A DNA stretch of 64,000 nucleotides, from positions 186,001-250,000 of the IMG/VR virus record IMGVR_UViG_3300033997_000243; one strand, 5' to 3'. The position numbers were made by a program, and so were the translations under genes. Of this stretch, positions 53,546-59,408 are shown one piece after another. Position 1 is the first letter of the stretch. Each line of letters starts with the position of its first letter. The notes below the pieces were generated by a model that had not been told where the DNA came from, did not search any database, and saw only the letters and a list, made by a program, of their open reading frames with translations.

Positions 53546-54055
53546 ATGGCTACAGAAAATTACTTGGTAAAACATTCAGAGCAAATTTCTGTAGCCAATG
53601 CCTTCTCTGCGAAATTTCACAATAGTCTGAAAATCGAAGCACATGATGGCGGCTACAAGTTTAATTTACTTGCAGATTTTAGTATGGATTTTTGTTGGGA
53701 CATAGAAAATAATTGCCCTATACTTCCAACAGATAATAAGTTACGTAAGTTCAAGATCGCGACGTTAACAGCAAGAGAAGGTTTTGAATCTGATCTTATT
53801 AGTAGTCCTCGATTCCTATGGTCGCTGTTTCCTCCATTTGGTAGTGGACTAAAGGCATCGGTTATTCATGATCTACTTTATAGAAATGATATTCCTTCTC
53901 CATCAGGGCAATTTTACACGCAGAAAGATGCGGACTTAATTTTTAAAATAGGTTTAATTGTTGAAGGCGTAACCGACAGAAAATCTTGGGCAATGTACAA
54001 TGCACTTCGTTTAGTTGGATTTCGTGCTTGGGAAGAAAACAGGGGAATGAAATGA
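53546..54055 (+). CDS. DUF1353-family protein
   Basis: GF.SDL.S.PR..W..FPP.G....A.V.HD.LY and AD..F...M..A.R..G. Confidence 0.85.
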   Translation: MATENYLVKHSEQISVANAFSAKFHNSLKIEAHDGGYKFNLLADFSMDFCWDIENNCPILPTDNKLRKFKIATLTAREGFESDLISSPRFLWSLFPPFGSGLKASVIHDLLYRNDIPSPSGQFYTQKDADLIFKIGLIVEGVTDRKSWAMYNALRLVGFRAWEENRGMK

Positions 54056-54516
54056 AATACGCTCTAATTGTTTTATCAATGTTTCTTTTTGGATGTGCTA
54101 GTGCGCCAGAGCCAAGAGAAATACAGACCAAAAAGATTGCAGAATTCGTACACAAAGAAGTAACTCCTGTGAGTATTCCAGAAGCCTTCACGCATGATGT
54201 AGGTAAGTACAAAGACGCCAACGGTAAAACATGGGCGCTTGTTGATCCAGATGATTTGGTAAAAATAGAGCAAGCGTATATCAGTGCTGAATCTAATGCA
54301 GCACTTGTGGAACAGGCCAATTTAATTTTAGAATTAACTGTCCAACGCGCAAACTTAATTCGTGAGCTTGCAGAGCTAGAGGAATACAGAGCATTGAAAA
54401 TGGAAGTTGTTTTAAAGGATGAAAGGGAAAGCAGAAGGGAAGAACAGTTGCGGAATAGTATTGAAAGCATAACACTGAAAATAATTACTGCACTTGCATT
54501 AGTCGTAGCAATATGA
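54052..54516 (+). CDS. lipoprotein, putative outer-membrane spanin
   Basis: start MKYAL at 54052; lipobox LFG-C; coiled coil; hydrophobic C-terminus. Confidence 0.6.
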   Translation: MKYALIVLSMFLFGCASAPEPREIQTKKIAEFVHKEVTPVSIPEAFTHDVGKYKDANGKTWALVDPDDLVKIEQAYISAESNAALVEQANLILELTVQRANLIRELAELEEYRALKMEVVLKDERESRREEQLRNSIESITLKIITALALVVAI

Positions 54517-54551
54517 GAAAGGGGAGCCATTACGGTTCCCTTTTCTTTTTT
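54517..54551 (+). terminator. terminator ending the late operon at the convergent junction
   Basis: GGGGAGCC...GGTTCCCT hairpin with a long U-tract. Confidence 0.75.
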
Positions 54552-54563
54552 CAACAAGTAAAT

Positions 54564-55397
54564 TTAAACTCGTGATCCAAAATCACGCATGGCTCCTGTA
54601 GGATCTGCGATGAATAACTCTCCAAGTAAAGATCCTTTTATATTTGGGTTGACTTCCCAAGTAGCGCGACGTATGAATAAATTAACGCGACATTTTAAAA
54701 AGGTATCATCATCGAAAACCGAACTTATCGAAATAAAGAGAGGTGCATTATGTGCAATGCTCGACATCTTTAAAGAATTAAGTCGGTCAATTGGATTCAT
54801 TGATTTATTTTTTACTGCTTTATATCTCCAAGCTAACTCTTCAGATATATAACCAATACATCTTCCAAGTTCAAAATAATCAGCGTTTCCTGAATTTGGA
54901 ATACCATCACACAAAACCACGGTGAATCCAGAATTCATTAGAATTCGTGCAGCTGTCTGATTTCCTGATTCAAACATTTCCACAGTAAAGGCTGCTTTAA
55001 AGGCTGTTAAAGTTTCACATATACTTCTTACATGATCTTCAACATTTGCATTCGGCACATCAATATGAAAATAATCTTTTGACTGTGTAGAATTCTGACC
55101 TAAATTAAATTCTTCTGAGAAGCTAGATATATAGCTCACTAAAGCTCTTAACAAATAAGATTTACCGGATCTTTGACCTATAAGAAGGCTAGATGTCAAA
55201 GCCTGTTCCCTGTAGTAACTAGCATCTAACTGCAAGTTACCAACATCTAAATAAGTGCAAGGTTTCGGAATGTTTATACCGTCTCTTTTTAAGAATTCAT
55301 CAGGCTTAACTTGACCGAATATCTGACTTCCAATCAAAATTAAATCAGGCCACATTCCATCATGGTATTTTGTACAAAATTGGAAAAAAGATTGCAT
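54564..55397 (-). CDS. truncated terminase-large-subunit-like ATPase domain
   Basis: Walker A GQRSGKS, degenerate Walker B (YISEELA), ISISS and TWEVNP...DP..A.RDFG; no nuclease domain. Confidence 0.6.
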   Translation of the reverse strand: MQSFFQFCTKYHDGMWPDLILIGSQIFGQVKPDEFLKRDGINIPKPCTYLDVGNLQLDASYYREQALTSSLLIGQRSGKSYLLRALVSYISSFSEEFNLGQNSTQSKDYFHIDVPNANVEDHVRSICETLTAFKAAFTVEMFESGNQTAARILMNSGFTVVLCDGIPNSGNADYFELGRCIGYISEELAWRYKAVKNKSMNPIDRLNSLKMSSIAHNAPLFISISSVFDDDTFLKCRVNLFIRRATWEVNPNIKGSLLGELFIADPTGAMRDFGSRV

Positions 55398-55406
55398 AAT
55401 TTACCC

Positions 55407-56279
55407 TCAGTCATTCAATATTTGTTTATTGAATATAAATAAGTATTCATTGTCTGATGGAACAGGGCTACCGAACTCACACTGAACAACCTTTGGAAAT
55501 GCAATTCCTTGTAAGCAAAAACCAATTGAGTCCAAGTCCAAAGCTTCCGTCAGCTCTACTATATTATTCAAATCTTTTGAGTTTGGTGCAATTCGAGTTA
55601 CCCAAAATTTAGTCTGTCTCTTATCAAGTTTAATGCCTTCAAAGATGCCAGTGATTCTTTCTATAGTGGTATAAGAATCCAAGAAAAACAGTTTTGGTTG
55701 TTTTTCGCGCCACTCTTTATATACCCTTATATCCAGCAATGTAGGATCTGCTGGAATAACTGCTGAAATAGATTTAACGCTGATTGCGAAATATTCCGAA
55801 GATGCAGTTCCCATGTGAAAAGCAAAGGAAATAGGTGCGTTAAAGAAATCACACAATTTCTTAGTAACGTGCTTTATCTTTGGTCGATTTAAAATTTCTT
55901 GATTTTGTGAATAAGAAATATGTTTGGCCAAATGTGCAGGTTTTGTATTATGCTTAGCACGAATAGCCTCAATATTATTTTCAGCGCGATTTATTTCACT
56001 TTTAAAAATTGATTCAAGTGAAACGCTATGCAAATCACACACTGATAATAATGTAATCAGTGTACCTGCTGCTTCCTGGTCTACTTCACCTTTTGGTCGG
56101 CTGTAAACGTGATCTAAAATACTATCCATTTGATCCCGCGATAATCCTATAGCCTGACACAATTCTACACATTCTTCTGCAAAACGAAAACTGCGTTCAC
56201 TCTTGTCATTTGTGTGTTCAACACCAAAACAATTAGTAAGCCAGTTTCTAACCCTGACTTTCATCTGCTGTAAATTCAT
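55407..56279 (-). CDS. MazG-like nucleotide pyrophosphohydrolase fused to an unknown domain
   Basis: RF.EE..EL.QA and V.QE..G motifs; start MNLQQ by GGAG SD. Confidence 0.7.
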   Translation of the reverse strand: MNLQQMKVRVRNWLTNCFGVEHTNDKSERSFRFAEECVELCQAIGLSRDQMDSILDHVYSRPKGEVDQEAAGTLITLLSVCDLHSVSLESIFKSEINRAENNIEAIRAKHNTKPAHLAKHISYSQNQEILNRPKIKHVTKKLCDFFNAPISFAFHMGTASSEYFAISVKSISAVIPADPTLLDIRVYKEWREKQPKLFFLDSYTTIERITGIFEGIKLDKRQTKFWVTRIAPNSKDLNNIVELTEALDLDSIGFCLQGIAFPKVVQCEFGSPVPSDNEYLFIFNKQILND

Positions 56280-56769
56280 CAACTTTCTCCTGTGTGCCAA
56301 TCACATCCGACATAAATTGTTTTGCTTTTAACACAACATGAGTGCAGCCTTGTTGCTCAACACAACTGGTTAAAAAGTTTGCCCAGTTCTTGTTCATCAT
56401 GGTTAAGAATTCTTTTGGAGATCCGCGCTTAGCGTAACGCTGCATATACTCCACTTTTAAATTCTTTTCAGGATAAACCAGAGTGAAGTCAATTCCAGCA
56501 TCTACCAAAGCTTGACGCACAGCATCATGCGAACTAACAAGCAAATAATCACATTGGTAACGAGCTTCTTCAATGTGTTTAATGTAATTTGCCGGAAAAT
56601 CATCTTTAGGGAATTTTGAACTGTCGCTATCCATAACAGTAAAGCCTAATTCCTGTTGACGATTGAAAAAGTGAGTTTTGCCAATCCCAGGAAATCCACA
56701 AATAATTTGAGCGCTTTTTTGCGGAACTGACTTAGGTTTGTTTTTGTTTAATGATACCAAAATTTTCAT
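56248..56769 (-). CDS. P-loop nucleotide-kinase-like protein with MKILVSL leader
   Basis: IICGFPGIGKT, DSDSS.F and R...RG motifs. Confidence 0.75.
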   Translation of the reverse strand: MKILVSLNKNKPKSVPQKSAQIICGFPGIGKTHFFNRQQELGFTVMDSDSSKFPKDDFPANYIKHIEEARYQCDYLLVSSHDAVRQALVDAGIDFTLVYPEKNLKVEYMQRYAKRGSPKEFLTMMNKNWANFLTSCVEQQGCTHVVLKAKQFMSDVIGTQEKVDEFTADESQG

Positions 56770-56783
56770 AATTGTTTCCTTCC

Positions 56784-56990
56784 CTAGTTTTTAACAAGAG
56801 GAATATTAATCGATAAATCTTGCACAGTGGCGTCACGATATACTTTGTGTTGATTCATATTTGAAGCCAACTCAATTTGATATACAAGTAAAACAGTGCC
56901 ATCTTCTAAAGTGTGAGGGCGCAATCGTGAATTTCCTGTAGGAAAATATTTAGTTTCTGGATGCGGTGGAACATTAGAGCTTGTTGACAT
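56784..56990 (-). CDS. small hypothetical phage protein
   Basis: AAGGA SD; packed operon. Confidence 0.6.
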   Translation of the reverse strand: MSTSSNVPPHPETKYFPTGNSRLRPHTLEDGTVLLVYQIELASNMNQHKVYRDATVQDLSINIPLVKN

Positions 56991-57003
56991 TAAATTAATT
57001 CCT

Positions 57004-57519
57004 TTAACAGACTAATTGCTGCGGTTGAGGTTTTAATTCCAAAGAGTTTAACGCATCCATTGCTGGAATGCTGTGCCAACTGTAAACTAAAGCCCTTAAC
57101 TTCACATCAGGTTGAATGCACTTGTTTTGTTTAACAAGTTTAATCACGCTTGCAATAAAGTTGTCTATCATTGCCGTTTTCGCGTTTGGATCAGATTTTA
57201 ACGCAAGCTCAGCAACAAATTTATAATTACGTGCAGCAAACGGACGTTGCATTAAAATCCAATCACGCGAAGATGAAGCAATACGTAACTGAATTATCTC
57301 ACGATCCGAATAACCATAGGCTATACATAAATCAGCGTGATATTTAGTGTAGCGCTTTACACCATCAAAAACAACTGGAATACTCACACCATATTTAGCA
57401 GCGGATTCACTAACAGACAGGCTACCACACAAGACGTCATGCACAGCATGTACACTTTTACTTATTACAGGCTTGGCCTTGATCATGTTGTAAATTGTCC
57501 AAAATTGATCTGAAGTCAT
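57004..57519 (-). CDS. HTH DNA-binding protein (TrfB/KorA-like N-terminus)
   Basis: MT..QF...A..DVL..G.S..E.A.KYGVS...V...VKR. Confidence 0.55.
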   Translation of the reverse strand: MTSDQFWTIYNMIKAKPVISKSVHAVHDVLCGSLSVSESAAKYGVSIPVVFDGVKRYTKYHADLCIAYGYSDREIIQLRIASSSRDWILMQRPFAARNYKFVAELALKSDPNAKTAMIDNFIASVIKLVKQNKCIQPDVKLRALVYSWHSIPAMDALNSLELKPQPQQLVC

Positions 57520-57534
57520 AGAGTGCCGTAACCT

Positions 57535-57663
57535 TTAATCTAGTTCTTTTGCTACATAACTGAGTGCGTTGCTTGCCACGAGTAAAGTAGATACTACAAT
57601 TGTACTTGCAATGTAAATAAGTACAGCACGAATAAAAGGATTCATCTTTTTCATATACATCAT
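57535..57663 (-). CDS. small membrane peptide, 42 aa (MMYMKKMNPFIRAVLIYIAS...)
   Basis: ATGA overlap with the upstream stop; one TM helix; not in the ORF track. Confidence 0.5.
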   Translation of the reverse strand: MMYMKKMNPFIRAVLIYIASTIVVSTLLVASNALSYVAKELD

Positions 57664-57878
57664 TTTGTTTGTTTTCCCTGATCTCCACGCCACACTAAAG
57701 CATCAGCTTGTCCAGTAAATACTTTCCAAGCTAAACTTAAACGAGTACGTAAACTTGGAAGCGATAATGGACGAGAAGCAGTCCAACAACTTGCACCCTG
57801 ACGAGTAATTTGTGTTTGCGTTTCAGAGTCCCGAATATCATCGGCTTGAAACAATTGAGGAGTTTGATACTCAAACAT
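57660..57878 (-). CDS. small conserved-type phage protein
   Basis: W..SRP...RL..AW.VFTG.ADA..W; GGAG SD before MFEYQ. Confidence 0.65.
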   Translation of the reverse strand: MFEYQTPQLFQADDIRDSETQTQITRQGASCWTASRPLSLPSLRTRLSLAWKVFTGQADALVWRGDQGKQTK

Positions 57879-57896
57879 AATAATCTCCAATAGGAA

Positions 57897-57914
57897 ACGA
57901 GGCCGAAGCCTCGT
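57897..57914 (-). terminator. C(UUCG)G hairpin terminator
   Basis: ACGAGGC-TTCG-GCCTCGT followed by TT. Confidence 0.6.
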
Positions 57915-57917
57915 ATA

Positions 57918-58724
57918 TTAAATGCTGAATGCGCTCAACCGATTCTTTTTACCAGTACGCGCAGTTTCTGTTGTGCTAATATGAACCCAACCAGTAAATG
58001 CACCCATATTTGGTTTATGGAATTCAAGAATCAACTGATCATACTGAATCTTACTATCATTTTTGATCCAGTTGAATAAAGATCCATTACTTCCACTCTT
58101 AGTAACTTCAAGATCAACAGCTTCACCTAACGGATGCTGCTTGCCAGCGTAATAGCGATCCCAAAGTTCTAAAATAATCGCATACGTGTGAGTTTTTGAA
58201 TTCAGTGCATTCCGAACTAAATCACGATGATACATAGTTGAATTAATTATGGTAACTAATTCAGCGGCTGTAGGCTCACTGTTGTTGCTGCGACGATAAG
58301 ACTTTGTAACGTATTTACTAAAGCCGTCTTTATAGGTAGCCATGTACTCAACTTCAGGGCCGCGATACCAACTGTTAGGTGTAAAGCCGCCAAACTTATT
58401 GCGGATAACTTCCAAACAAGTTTTAGCTGTGTAACGTGCATTTTCAACAATGTGAATCATGTTGGCAGGTACACGATTTTCAAGGCCATACTTAGTGGCG
58501 TTATCACTACGAATCAACTCTTTATATTTAAAGTTGTCGCTTAAAAGTTCGTCAGGATTAATATCTAAGTAACCATCACCATCTTTATCACGGTAACGAT
58601 CTAAAAGAGTTTGATGTACTTCTTCGGCACTTACCTGCTGTTCAACCAAAATAAATCCTTTTGGATTCAAGTTCACTTTGGCTTCAGTAGCGGTCATATA
58701 CGGATTTGAGTTTGTGAAAAACAT
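57918..58724 (-). CDS. peptidase M15-family protein (candidate endolysin) with an insertion
   Basis: LS.NF...EL.RS, LE.IR..FG...NSWYR, QH..GEAVD, DQLILE and WVHIS. Confidence 0.8.
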   Translation of the reverse strand: MFFTNSNPYMTATEAKVNLNPKGFILVEQQVSAEEVHQTLLDRYRDKDGDGYLDINPDELLSDNFKYKELIRSDNATKYGLENRVPANMIHIVENARYTAKTCLEVIRNKFGGFTPNSWYRGPEVEYMATYKDGFSKYVTKSYRRSNNSEPTAAELVTIINSTMYHRDLVRNALNSKTHTYAIILELWDRYYAGKQHPLGEAVDLEVTKSGSNGSLFNWIKNDSKIQYDQLILEFHKPNMGAFTGWVHISTTETARTGKKNRLSAFSI

Positions 58725-58727
58725 GAA

Positions 58728-59408
58728 TTATCCTCTCTCAATGTTATCAAAAATATCGGCAGGTTTTGCCCTACGTTTAACGCTACGTGCTTGCGCGGCA
58801 GAATTACATTTTGCCTTATCCACCAAGTAATTTTCAAGCTTAGGAAGTGTATTAAACGCCTGAAGAATTTTCTTCAGTATAATATCGTATTCCTTTTTAA
58901 TTTTCTCAGAAGGTTCTTTATTTGATTTGCCGTGAGAAACATTTTTATCTATGAATAAAATTCTTAGATAGTGATCATGCAGCTTGTATAAAACTTCTGG
59001 ATCTTCAATGTCTTTCATTAGCGACCAAGGAACATTTATTCTATTCCCGATCTCTAAAAGATCATAGTGATGTCCGTGGTATTCAATATAATCACGGCCA
59101 AGATCGCGTAACATACCTTTAATATCAGCACCATAAATTCCATAGTATGCAGCTATATAAACTGGTGAACAATCAAAAGCAGAAGCAAGTTCATCAATAG
59201 TGCATAACCGATTTCCATAACGAATACGAACATAAGGACTTGCGTACTGAGATTTTTCAGGTAATTTAATCAATTCATTTGGAATAGATTCAAGTCGTTT
59301 TTCGCACTCACAAACAACACCCATCGTTGTATTGAATTTTGAGTTTGCTGTGCGGTGAACAATGCTGTAACACTTTCCGTACTCAGCTAATAGTTGTTTT
59401 GCTTTCAT
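58728..59408 (-). CDS. DNA-binding protein resembling homing-endonuclease accessory modules
   Basis: CEC motif and two I.Y.G....L.E...... HTH-like repeats; no HNH core seen. Confidence 0.4.
   Translation of the reverse strand: MKAKQLLAEYGKCYSIVHRTANSKFNTTMGVVCECEKRLESIPNELIKLPEKSQYASPYVRIRYGNRLCTIDELASAFDCSPVYIAAYYGIYGADIKGMLRDLGRDYIEYHGHHYDLLEIGNRINVPWSLMKDIEDPEVLYKLHDHYLRILFIDKNVSHGKSNKEPSEKIKKEYDIILKKILQAFNTLPKLENYLVDKAKCNSAAQARSVKRRAKPADIFDNIERG

What the first reader, a model, noticed from the sequence alone, without database searches (positions are those of the whole stretch)
54564..55397. Stand-alone, degenerate terminase ATPase domain: possible immune decoy or packaging regulator
Seen: GQRSGKS, EELA in place of DE, ISS, and TWEVNP...DP..AMRDFG, then a stop where a TerL nuclease domain would begin. 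It is 277 aa and sits among non-structural genes. Known: Avs1-3 STAND receptors recognise TerL. Inference: a decoy that titrates such sensors, or a dominant-negative against competing phages.
Basis: partly seen in the sequence, partly recalled or inferred. Interest (0 to 1): 0.7.

Follow-up and report, generated by a model that had tools for sequence, protein, structure and literature searches.

The report
Nuclease-less copy of phage terminase ATPase
A 320-kb uncultured jumbo phage has a normal DNA-packaging enzyme and also a short, fast-evolving, partly degenerate copy of that enzyme's ATPase half; close relatives lack or relocate this copy, so it is an accessory gene of unknown role, much like the uncharacterised vs.8 protein of phage T4.

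Summary
Window 54564-55397 (minus strand) is an intact 277-codon gene. Its product aligns from end to end with the ATPase domain of large terminases (TerL) and stops where the nuclease domain would begin.

- **Not a split terL.** The same 319.5-kb phage genome has a full-length 983-aa terL about 13 kb away. No other nuclease domain is present.
- **Not a decaying pseudogene.** The only homologue found among 1.84 billion representative proteins is 35% identical. It has the same start and the same end, and it lies in the syntenic operon of a related phage.
- **Degenerate as a motor.** It keeps the P-loop lysine, the catalytic glutamate and the TWEVNP...DP..AMRDFG lid motif. It has lost:
  - the Q-motif glutamine;
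  - the arginine that aligns with the P74-26 R139 trans finger;
  - the zinc-ribbon cysteines;
  - the Walker B aspartate, which is Glu here.
- **Accessory.** It is absent from three complete related jumbo phages and from two syntenic contigs. It sits in a different slot in a third relative, and near-identical wastewater strains appear to carry a mini-ORF in its place.

Its function is untested. My best guess is a non-motor TerL mimic used in virus-host or virus-virus conflict. The specific Avs-decoy idea has no support, because published data show that isolated TerL ATPase domains and T4 vs.8 trigger Avs2 rather than block it.

The parts
54564..55397 (-). Intact 277-codon gene (P0001): a stand-alone, nuclease-less paralogue of the TerL ATPase domain
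   Evidence: ORF list. Homology to TerL. AlphaFold2 model and Foldseek matches. One full-length orthologue, P0002.
55398..55411 (-). Nine-nucleotide intergenic gap with a GAGGG Shine-Dalgarno that overlaps the TGA stop of the upstream MazG-like gene, suggesting translational coupling
   Evidence: Read from the sequence. The same junction and the same ATGCAA start are used by a different mini-ORF in relatives.
55341..55343 (-). L19, at the column where 32 of 36 TerLs have the Q-motif glutamine; it is Leu in both family members
   Evidence: Column statistics on alignment A4. Calling this column the adenine-binding Q motif is inferred from its position upstream of Walker A.
55218..55313 (-). Residues 29-60: a beta-hairpin remnant of the TerL zinc ribbon (CPxC...CPxC in the parent clade), with the cysteines gone
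   Evidence: Own TerL sequence. Alignments A2 and A4. Model strands E30-38 and E41-46.
55158..55178 (-). Walker A / P-loop G74-Q-R-S-G-K79-S80, identical to the spliced P-loop of the phage's own TerL (AGQR|intein|SGKS)
   Evidence: (second hhalign hit, E 4.3e-6).
54837..54842 (-). Walker B position: E186-E187. The aspartate (36 of 36 TerLs) is replaced by Glu; the catalytic Glu is kept. The orthologue P0002 has D-E.
54864..54908 (-). Loop of residues 164-178 before the Walker B strand. No Arg sits where the parent clade has LRG, the position that aligns with the P74-26 R139 trans-arginine finger.
   Evidence: Profile-to-PDB alignment, including the R139A mutant chain. Alignment A4. The exact register in the paralogues is uncertain by 1-2 residues, but no register gives an Arg conserved in both members.
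54717..54725 (-). C-motif region S225-S226-V227 (TerL consensus S-S-P; P0002 has G-S-P)
54570..54671 (-). Lid motif, residues 243-276: RRATWEVNP...DPTGAMRDFGSR. This is the most TerL-like part; T246, W247, N250 and P251 are invariant in 36 TerLs. The protein ends one residue later.
54520..54553 (.). Hairpin (GGGGAGCC/GGTTCCC) between the two convergent operons. A T-run follows on the plus strand and a weaker one on the minus strand. It is conserved in relatives.
   Evidence: Sequence. Fold of -12.2 kcal/mol with z-score only -1.6. Conserved in L106, L107 and L108. The terminator scan did not list it.

Best explanation
**Identity (shown).** The gene encodes a lineage-specific paralogue of the ATPase domain of this phage group's own large terminase (the PaBG/NCTB-like jumbo-phage TerL clade). 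It lacks four parts of TerL:
- the acidic N-terminal extension;
- the zinc-binding cysteines;
- the intein that interrupts the real terL;
- the whole RNase-H-like nuclease domain.

Selection keeps it as an open, full-length gene. It is nevertheless dispensable and mobile within a mosaic accessory operon.

**Activity (inferred from sequence).** It keeps the P-loop lysine and arginine, the catalytic glutamate, and the lid motif at near-consensus. It has lost the Q-motif glutamine, the arginine equivalent to the P74-26 R139 trans finger, the DExxxF phenylalanine and, in this copy, the Walker B aspartate. It probably still folds as a TerL ATPase domain and may still bind nucleotide. It is unlikely to work as a ring translocase, and it cannot cut DNA.

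**Mechanism I commit to (inference, about 0.4).** It acts as a TerL look-alike and does its job by binding something that normally engages the TerL ATPase domain. Given its accessory, fast-evolving, slot-hopping behaviour, that partner is more likely part of a conflict than part of the phage's own routine packaging. Candidates are a host factor that senses or attacks TerL, or the packaging proteins of a competing phage or satellite. The functional analogue is T4 vs.8, which arose independently.

**On the confidence figure.** I put the identity part at about 0.9 and the mechanism part at about 0.4. The single figure given is for the mechanism.
For: **Homology and fold**
- Sequence homology to TerL.
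- Fold.

**Full terL elsewhere, no spare nuclease domain**
-.

**Maintained by selection**
- The single orthologue P0002 is 35% identical over residues 2-276, with the same termini.
- It lies in a syntenic operon.
- pN 0.45 is below pS 0.71.
- A good Shine-Dalgarno precedes the start.
- GC content and codon usage are typical of the genome.
- The only SNP in 834 bp among the X3/X4 strains is synonymous.

**Degenerate catalytic set**
- Column statistics and the mapping onto P74-26 R139.
- R139 is described as the trans finger in PMC5727402.

**Accessory and mobile**
- No copy in three complete related jumbo phages.
- None in the 20-kb syntenic loci fetched from contigs L106 and L107, where the slot is empty or holds a 26-codon ORF.
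- A different slot in L010.
- Wastewater strains cover both flanks but not the gene. One loose end reads a different ORF from the same ATGCAA start.
- dN is 0.68, against 0.28-0.41 in the neighbours.

**Origin**
- On the tree it groups with the jumbo TerL clade (SH-aLRT 80). A sister position to the phage's own TerL is not rejected (AU p 0.33).

**Precedent**
- T4 vs.8 is a stand-alone TerL-ATPase-like protein that engages EcAvs2 (PMC13601566).
- Its family occurs in about 1,010 phage records.
Against: - No experiment and no interaction prediction supports any partner. The one complex prediction gave no answer.
- Only two family members are known, so site-wise selection cannot be measured, and dS is saturated.
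- The structural model was built on a TerL alignment, so its TerL-like fold is partly circular.
- The finger and Q-motif assignments rest on alignments at about 20% identity.
- R191 is conserved in both members and replaces the near-invariant Phe after Walker B. It could be a substitute finger, as in D6E R158 or phi29 R146.
- P0002 keeps D-E, so ATPase activity may survive in the family.
- Published data show TerL ATPase look-alikes trigger Avs2 and Upx, which argues against the simplest anti-sensor version.
- Gaps in Logan contigs are not proof of absence.
Confidence: 0.4

Rival explanations
1. **Packaging regulator or poison subunit.** The protein joins or caps the TerL pentamer, or binds TerS or the portal. 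Because it lacks a trans-arginine finger and a nuclease domain, it would slow, time or terminate the phage's own packaging, or block that of a related superinfecting phage.
For: - It retains the lid motif, which is the most TerL-like part, and the P-loop.
- It has lost the R139-equivalent arginine.
- Isolated TerL ATPase domains can form pentamers, and D6E becomes about 60-fold more active without its nuclease domain (PMC5727402). A free ATPase domain can therefore enter such assemblies.
Against: - It is dispensable: close and distant relatives lack it.
- It is not next to terL, the portal gene or any identifiable terS.
- Only about 20% identity to its own TerL remains outside the lid motif, and about half of the conserved TerL columns are changed.
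- It would also be expected to poison its own motor.
- No interaction prediction succeeded.
Confidence: 0.2
2. **Immune decoy in the strict sense.** The protein binds Avs1-3 or Upx-type TerL sensors without activating them. It would then soak up the sensors before the late-expressed TerL appears.
For: - It keeps what such sensors are reported to read, namely the ATPase fold, the P-loop and the catalytic Glu. It has shed what a decoy does not need.
- It is accessory and fast evolving.
- The authors of PMC13601566 raise an anti-defence role as one possibility for vs.8-like activators.
Against: - In PMC13601566 the TerL ATPase domain alone activates EcAvs2 and Upx, and vs.8 is toxic with EcAvs2. 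In these systems binding is the trigger.
- No silent-binding decoy for a STAND sensor came up in the papers read here.
- The host and its defence repertoire are unknown.
- There are no PADLOC or PHROG anti-defence matches.
Confidence: 0.1
3. **ATPase recruited to another job.** Here the P-loop domain works in a DNA or nucleotide transaction unrelated to TerL partners, for example with the neighbouring MazG-like and kinase-like proteins. The TerL ancestry would be only history.
For: - The P-loop Lys and catalytic Glu are conserved in both members.
- The gene is translationally coupled to a MazG-like gene here.
- R191 is newly conserved in both members.
Against: - The neighbour is not conserved. 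In L010 the gene sits next to other genes, and the MazG-like gene is replaced.
- The best-conserved parts are exactly the TerL-specific lid motif and N-terminal helix, not a new surface.
Confidence: 0.15
4. **Functionless relic.** A partial terL duplication that simply has not yet been disrupted.
For: - Many conserved TerL positions are lost.
- The gene has been lost or replaced in relatives.
- It sits on the longest branch of the tree.
Against: - Two copies at 35% identity, with saturated synonymous sites, both keep the full frame, the same start and the same last residues in a 37.6% GC genome.
- pN is below pS.
- The TerL invariants T246, W247, N250, P251, K79 and E187 are all kept.
- The Shine-Dalgarno is intact.
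Confidence: 0.1
5. **Half of a split, functional terL.** The nuclease half would be encoded elsewhere, or reached by splicing or frameshifting.
For: The protein ends exactly at the domain boundary.
Against: - A complete 983-aa terL with both domains is present.
- The only nuclease-domain match in the genome is that gene.
- Downstream of the stop lie a hairpin and a convergent gene.
Confidence: 0.01

Closest known systems
Large terminase (TerL) ATPase domain of the PaBG / NCTB / Erwinia Y3-like jumbo-phage clade, including this phage's own TerL
   Same: - Collinear homology over all 277 residues.
- Identical P-loop, GQRSGKS.
- Catalytic Glu present.
- Lid motif TWEVNP...DP..AMRDFG.
- A similar N-terminal helix (F..F...P...IG..F).
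- Predicted TerL ATPase fold.
   Different: - No nuclease domain, no N-terminal acidic extension, no zinc-ribbon cysteines and no intein.
- Q-motif Gln replaced by Leu.
- No Arg at the LRG position (P74-26 R139).
- Walker B Asp replaced by Glu.
- The DExxxF Phe replaced by Arg.
- Shortened inserts.
- A branch several times longer on the tree.
- Not next to the portal gene, and dispensable.
T4 vs.8 (phrog_1488; about 1,010 phage records)
   Same: - A short stand-alone protein with a TerL-ATPase-like fold and Walker motifs.
- Encoded away from the packaging genes, among accessory genes.
- Taxon-restricted.
- Function unknown (PMC13601566).
   Different: - No detectable sequence relationship beyond the P-loop: hhalign probability 0.35%, and no phrog_1488 hit.
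- It derives from a different TerL lineage, so the origin is independent.
- vs.8 keeps Walker A and Walker B, according to the paper.
- vs.8 has been shown to be toxic with EcAvs2; nothing has been tested for this protein.
phi29 gp16 / asccphi28 gp11-type packaging ATPases
   Same: An ASCE packaging-ATPase fold without nuclease activity. Foldseek gives a weak match to phi28 gp11 (E 3e-3).
   Different: Those proteins are the sole, essential packaging motors of their phages, and they carry a trans-arginine finger. Here a complete TerL exists, the protein is dispensable, and its TerL matches are far stronger.

Membership tests
Large terminase (TerL) | N-terminal ASCE ATPase domain with the Walker A lysine | tested here: met
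   GQRSGK79S aligns with the TerL P-loop. The model's best matches are TerL ATPase structures.
Large terminase (TerL) | Walker B hhhhD-E with an invariant Asp and the catalytic Glu | tested here: inconclusive
   E187 (catalytic Glu) is present. The Asp column, invariant in 36 of 36 TerLs, is Glu in P0001 and Asp in P0002.
Large terminase (TerL) | Q-motif glutamine upstream of Walker A | tested here: not met
   This column is Q in 32 of 36 TerLs and Leu in both members. Naming it the Q motif is by position only.
Large terminase (TerL) | Trans-acting arginine finger (P74-26 R139 position; LRG in the parent clade) | tested here: not met
   The profile aligns LRG with P74-26 DNLRG, and the R139A chain confirms the residue. 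No conserved Arg occurs there in either member. A substitute such as R191 cannot be excluded.
Large terminase (TerL) | C-terminal RNase-H-like nuclease domain | tested here: not met
   The protein stops one residue after ...RDFGSR. Full TerLs continue for 220-311 residues. The only nuclease-domain match in the genome is the real terL.
Large terminase (TerL) | Core gene of the packaging module, universal among relatives | tested here: not met
   Absent from three complete related jumbo phages and from syntenic contigs L106 and L107. It sits in an accessory operon, 13 kb from terL.
T4 vs.8 family (phrog_1488) | Sequence membership in the family profile | tested here: not met
   PHROG scans of P0001 and P0002 give no phrog_1488 hit. 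hhalign of A1 against vs.8 gives probability 0.35%.
T4 vs.8 family (phrog_1488) | Activation of EcAvs2 on co-expression | not testable with these tools
   This needs a co-expression toxicity assay. It is reported for vs.8 in PMC13601566.
Split terL (two-gene terminase) | A separate gene that supplies the nuclease half, and no intact terL | tested here: not met

The most novel reading that the evidence does not exclude
Phages repeatedly evolve nuclease-less, catalytically blunted copies of their own terminase ATPase domain as weapons. T4 vs.8 is one case and this family is an independent second. Such a copy would either neutralise host sensors or effectors that target TerL, or poison the packaging motor of competing phages and satellites. 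That would make TerL mimicry a general counter-defence or exclusion strategy.
Probability: 0.2. Interest if true: 0.8.

Novelty: new variant of a known kind. Interest (0 to 1): 0.45.

Why it matters
TerL is the viral protein most often read by bacterial pattern-recognition receptors (Avs1-3, Upx). T4 vs.8, a stand-alone TerL-ATPase-like protein, was recently found to engage Avs2, and its role is an open question.

This gene is a second, independently derived example. It has a clear parent (the phage's own TerL), a defined set of lost and retained motifs, and presence/absence polymorphism among near-identical strains. That makes the question comparative: which features do such paralogues keep, and do they trigger, block or ignore TerL sensors?

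If they prove to be counter-defence or exclusion factors, that would add a new class of phage weapon. If not, this is a tidy case of domain duplication and decay in a jumbo phage. Either way it warns annotators that a short "terminase" hit need not be a broken or split terL.

Tried and rejected
**Family and sequence searches that found nothing useful**
- Pfam, NCBIfam and PADLOC gave no hit for either member. PHROGs gave only a 35-residue match to a TerL family.
- The PDB sequence search with the single protein found nothing.
- tblastn against 50,697 phage records found nothing.
- The word-indexed searches of 5.8 billion proteins found only the protein itself, and then P0002 once it was added to the query.
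- Viral and metagenome contig scans found only the same phage plus ordinary full-length TerLs.
- The ESM Atlas look-alikes were generic P-loop clusters below the useful score.

**Predictions that failed**
- Single-sequence AlphaFold2 failed, with pLDDT 37. It was replaced by a run using a 39-row alignment.
- The complex prediction of the protein with the nuclease domain of its own TerL gave no answer, because the partner's fold was uncertain without an alignment. It counts neither for nor against binding.

**Analyses with limited power**
- dN/dS between the two members cannot be quantified, because synonymous sites are saturated.
- The tree cannot date the duplication. The pair sits on a very long branch, and both a basal position and a position sister to the phage's own TerL are allowed.
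- The promoter scan was at background level.

**Ideas rejected**
- Gene conversion as the cause of the 45% identity of the lid motif to the phage's own TerL. The motif is equally close to many other TerLs.
- A split terL.
- Recent foreign origin.
- GKN in P0002's P-loop as evidence of decay. Many genuine TerLs in the wider set have GKD at that position.
Full report
**1. What is there**

The finding's coordinates match one open reading frame exactly: 54564..55397 on the minus strand, 277 codons, starting with ATG.
- It is the last gene of a minus-strand operon. Nine nucleotides separate it from the stop of the upstream gene, and a GAGGG Shine-Dalgarno lies 6 nt before the ATG.
- Downstream come a hairpin and then a convergent plus-strand operon.

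**2. The genome**

The window is bases 186,001-250,000 of a 319,518-bp virus record with direct terminal repeats. CheckV rates it 100% complete, and its GC content is 37.6%.
- A full-length large terminase gene lies at G000:C1:254314-257265. It encodes 983 aa and matches phrog_17415 at E 5.9e-284.
- Its relatives are the TerLs of PaBG, phage NCTB and the Erwinia/Dickeya Y3-like jumbo phages, at 39-48% identity.
- This real TerL carries an intein inside its P-loop (...VVVAGQR|CVTGD...DSHN|SGKSAVV...) and a four-cysteine zinc ribbon upstream of it.
- The only nuclease-domain match in the genome is this gene.

The finding is therefore not half of a split terL.

**3. Homology to TerL**

Within the genome, the only significant relative of the 277-aa protein is the real TerL: 45% identity over the last 44 residues, BLASTP E 4e-8 pairwise and 6e-6 against all ORFs.

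A profile of the two family members was compared with 12 intein-free TerLs:
- 98.2% probability for residues 218-276;
- a second, independent hit on the P-loop (86.8%, E 4.3e-6);
- in global mode, one collinear alignment of residues 1-277 with TerL columns 76-408 of 699 (99.6%, E 1.3e-22).

In 12 other viral loci the TWEVNP...RDFG motif lies inside TerLs of 503-1005 aa, with 220-311 residues following it. The protein therefore ends at the ATPase/nuclease junction.

An AlphaFold2 model made with a 39-row alignment reached pLDDT 80.4 and pTM 0.81. The single-sequence run had failed at pLDDT 37.
- Its best 30 PDB matches are all TerL ATPase domains: P74-26, T4 gp17, D6E, Sf6 and HK97, from E 3e-7.
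- It has 131 viral matches at E of 1e-3 or better in BFVD. Every named entry among the 50 listed is a terminase or carries terminase-associated domains.
- The model leans on TerL rows, so it corroborates the homology rather than proving it.

**4. It is a gene, not a wreck**

An exhaustive HMMER pass over 1.84 billion representative proteins found exactly one homologue, P0002. It is 262 aa, 35% identical, and aligns 2-276 to 2-261.
- The two proteins begin alike (M[QI]SF..FC.K...GMWP.LILIGS.IF.Q) and end alike (RRATWE[VI]NP...DPT.AMRDFG.R. then stop).
- P0002 lies on a 5.4-kb contig whose other genes are 34-71% identical to the neighbours of our gene.
- Synonymous sites between the two phages are saturated (pS 0.59-0.96). 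Formal dN/dS is therefore meaningless, but pN (0.45) is well below pS (0.71).
- Two 260-277-codon frames have stayed open in an AT-rich genome.
- GC content and codon usage are ordinary for the genome.
- Among near-identical strains in two subsurface runs, the only difference in the 834 bp is a synonymous change in codon 22. The next kilobase has more than 30 differences.

**5. How degenerate it is**

I aligned both members with 37 TerL ATPase segments and tabulated every column conserved in at least 70% of 36 TerLs.

| Status | Positions |
|---|---|
| Kept in both members | G74, S77, G78, K79 (P-loop); Y89; E187 (catalytic Glu); T246, W247, E248, N250, P251, P266 (lid motif) |
| Lost in both members | Presumed Q-motif glutamine (Q in 32/36, Leu here); Glu before strand 1; the A..QA and SPWF motifs; Phe of DExxxF (35/36, Arg in both); zinc-ribbon cysteines |
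| Lost in one member | Walker B Asp (Glu in P0001, Asp in P0002); first C-motif Ser and the residue after the P-loop Lys (P0002); C-motif Pro (P0001) |

A profile search of the PDB aligned the parent clade's LRG motif with DNLRG of P74-26. The deposited R139A mutant chain pins that arginine as R139. [quoted passage not shown]
- Neither paralogue has an arginine conserved at that position in any plausible register.
- Other TerLs place the finger after Walker B (D6E R158, phi29 R146), and R191 is newly conserved in both paralogues. I therefore call the finger "not found" rather than "absent".

Overall the protein looks able to fold, and perhaps to hold nucleotide. It is poorly equipped for ring-coupled hydrolysis and cannot cut DNA.

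The D6E study also reports that isolated TerL ATPase domains form pentamers, and that removing the nuclease domain raises kcat about 60-fold. A free and fully active ATPase domain would be a futile ATP burner. That may explain why such paralogues are blunted; this is my inference.

**6. Origin**

On a maximum-likelihood tree the two paralogues sit on a very long branch. They share one side of a branch with the PaBG/NCTB-like jumbo clade (SH-aLRT 80). Forcing them next to the phage's own TerL is not rejected (AU p 0.33).

The identical GQRSGKS P-loop, the N-terminal helix and the remnant of the clade-specific zinc ribbon also point to a duplication of this lineage's own terL. The date is unresolved.

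**7. It is accessory and moves**

| Relative | What the slot holds |
|---|---|
| Three complete related jumbo phages (286, 263 and 258 kb) | Only their full-length TerL matches the family profile |
| L106, L107 (71-74 kb; same operon gene for gene, MazG-like gene 62% identical) | MazG-like gene runs straight into the hairpin (L106), or is followed by a 26-codon ORF, MQHDHTKQF... (L107) |
| L108 (243 kb, 98% similar) | The gene, 100% identical, in our slot |
| L010 | The orthologue in another slot of the same operon, where the others have a 162-171-aa gene |
| Wastewater runs X5-X8 | Contigs 94-97% identical cover both flanks; none covers 54515-55400, even at 80% identity |

In run X6, one contig runs from the shared ATGCAA start into a different sequence that reads MQHNHEKRL.... 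Holes in contigs prove nothing on their own, but that loose end is positive evidence for an alternative allele.

The gene's non-synonymous divergence (dN 0.68) is about twice that of its neighbours (0.28-0.41).

**8. Surroundings**
- Upstream in the operon: a MazG-like protein, a small P-loop kinase-like protein and an endolysin-like protein.
- On the converging strand: a lipoprotein with Rz-like features, a DUF1353 protein and small membrane proteins.
- None of these is a packaging gene.
- No neighbour of the TerL-like gene is the same in the two phages that carry it in different slots.

**9. Comparison with what is known**

Evans et al. 2026 (PMC13601566) report several relevant results:
- EcAvs2 and Upx are activated by the TerL ATPase domain alone.
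- T4 vs.8 is an uncharacterised stand-alone protein, homologous and structurally similar to the T4 TerL ATPase domain, and it is toxic with EcAvs2.
- The function of such proteins is open, and an anti-defence role is one possibility.

vs.8 (219 aa, phrog_1488) occurs in about 1,010 phage records. Short terminase-like proteins of 222-244 aa also appear among the BFVD matches from other jumbo phages, such as Pectobacterium CBB and Agrobacterium Atu_ph07.

Our family shows no sequence relationship to vs.8 beyond the P-loop. It is an independent instance of the same kind of protein: it works like vs.8 in architecture, but it is not a member of that family. It is also not a TerL, since it fails the nuclease-domain, Q-motif, finger and core-gene criteria.

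**10. Mechanism and verdict**

*Shown:* identity as a maintained, accessory, nuclease-less, partly degenerate paralogue of the TerL ATPase domain.

*Inferred:* it acts as a TerL look-alike by binding something that normally engages that domain. Given its population behaviour, a conflict setting is the more likely one (about 0.4).

*Rivals:*
- modulator or poison subunit of packaging, 0.2;
- an unrelated ATPase job, 0.15;
- a strict silent decoy of Avs or Upx, 0.1, which the trigger data argue against;
- a relic, 0.1;
- a split terL, refuted.

The one interaction prediction I could run gave no answer.

This is a well-founded observation with an untested interpretation. It is a new variant of a recently noticed but uncharacterised kind, of moderate interest, and directly testable by co-expression assays.

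Noticed in passing
outside the window: G000:C1:254314-257265 (locus L001:1402-4353, minus strand): The real terL carries an intein inside the Walker A motif (AGQR|CVTGD...DSHN|SGKS). Pfam Intein_splicing gives E 1.1e-7, which is below the gathering score. Many Erwinia/Dickeya relatives have TerLs of similar length, whereas NCTB, PaBG and others lack the insert.
   Followed up: partly
outside the window: locus L002:976-3207 (minus strand), G000:C1 about 305.9-308.2 kb: A 743-aa RecA/Rad51-like protein also has an intein-like insert (Pfam RecA 1.6e-18; Intein_splicing 1e-5, below cutoff). It accounts for the second weak phrog_17415 hit.
   Followed up: no
window 54515-55406, and loci L106:10846-10908, L107:10852-11010, L108:10873-11764: The slot between the MazG-like gene and the inter-operon hairpin is polymorphic among relatives. 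It is empty, holds a 26-codon ORF (MQHDHTKQF...), or holds the TerL-like gene. The mini-ORF and the TerL-like gene share the same ribosome-binding site and the same first two codons (ATGCAA).
   Followed up: yes
window 55407-56300 (minus strand): The upstream gene has a MazG-like N-terminal domain (phrog_8593 and phrog_14118). It probably starts at Met8, since it is 290 aa in a 98%-identical relative. It is far more polymorphic among close strains than the TerL-like gene: more than 30 SNPs against 1.
   Followed up: partly
window 56784-59408 (minus strand), against L010, L106, L107: The whole operon is a mosaic. Between conserved endolysin-like and kinase-like genes, relatives swap a 162-171-aa gene, a 136-aa gene and the MazG-like gene for unrelated ORFs.
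   Followed up: partly
window 53986-54516 (plus strand) and 53943-54557 (minus strand): The lipoprotein ORF probably starts at Met23, since it is 154 aa in relatives. It has an LFGC lipobox and weak Rz-like spanin matches. The 204-aa minus-strand ORF overlapping it looks like a shadow ORF.
   Followed up: no
window 54400-56400 (sequencing-run search): This phage, or near-identical strains, occurs in subsurface metagenomes (the likely source). Relatives 94-97% identical occur in wastewater libraries labelled RNA-Seq that may hold DNA. No evidence of transcription can be drawn from them.
   Followed up: partly
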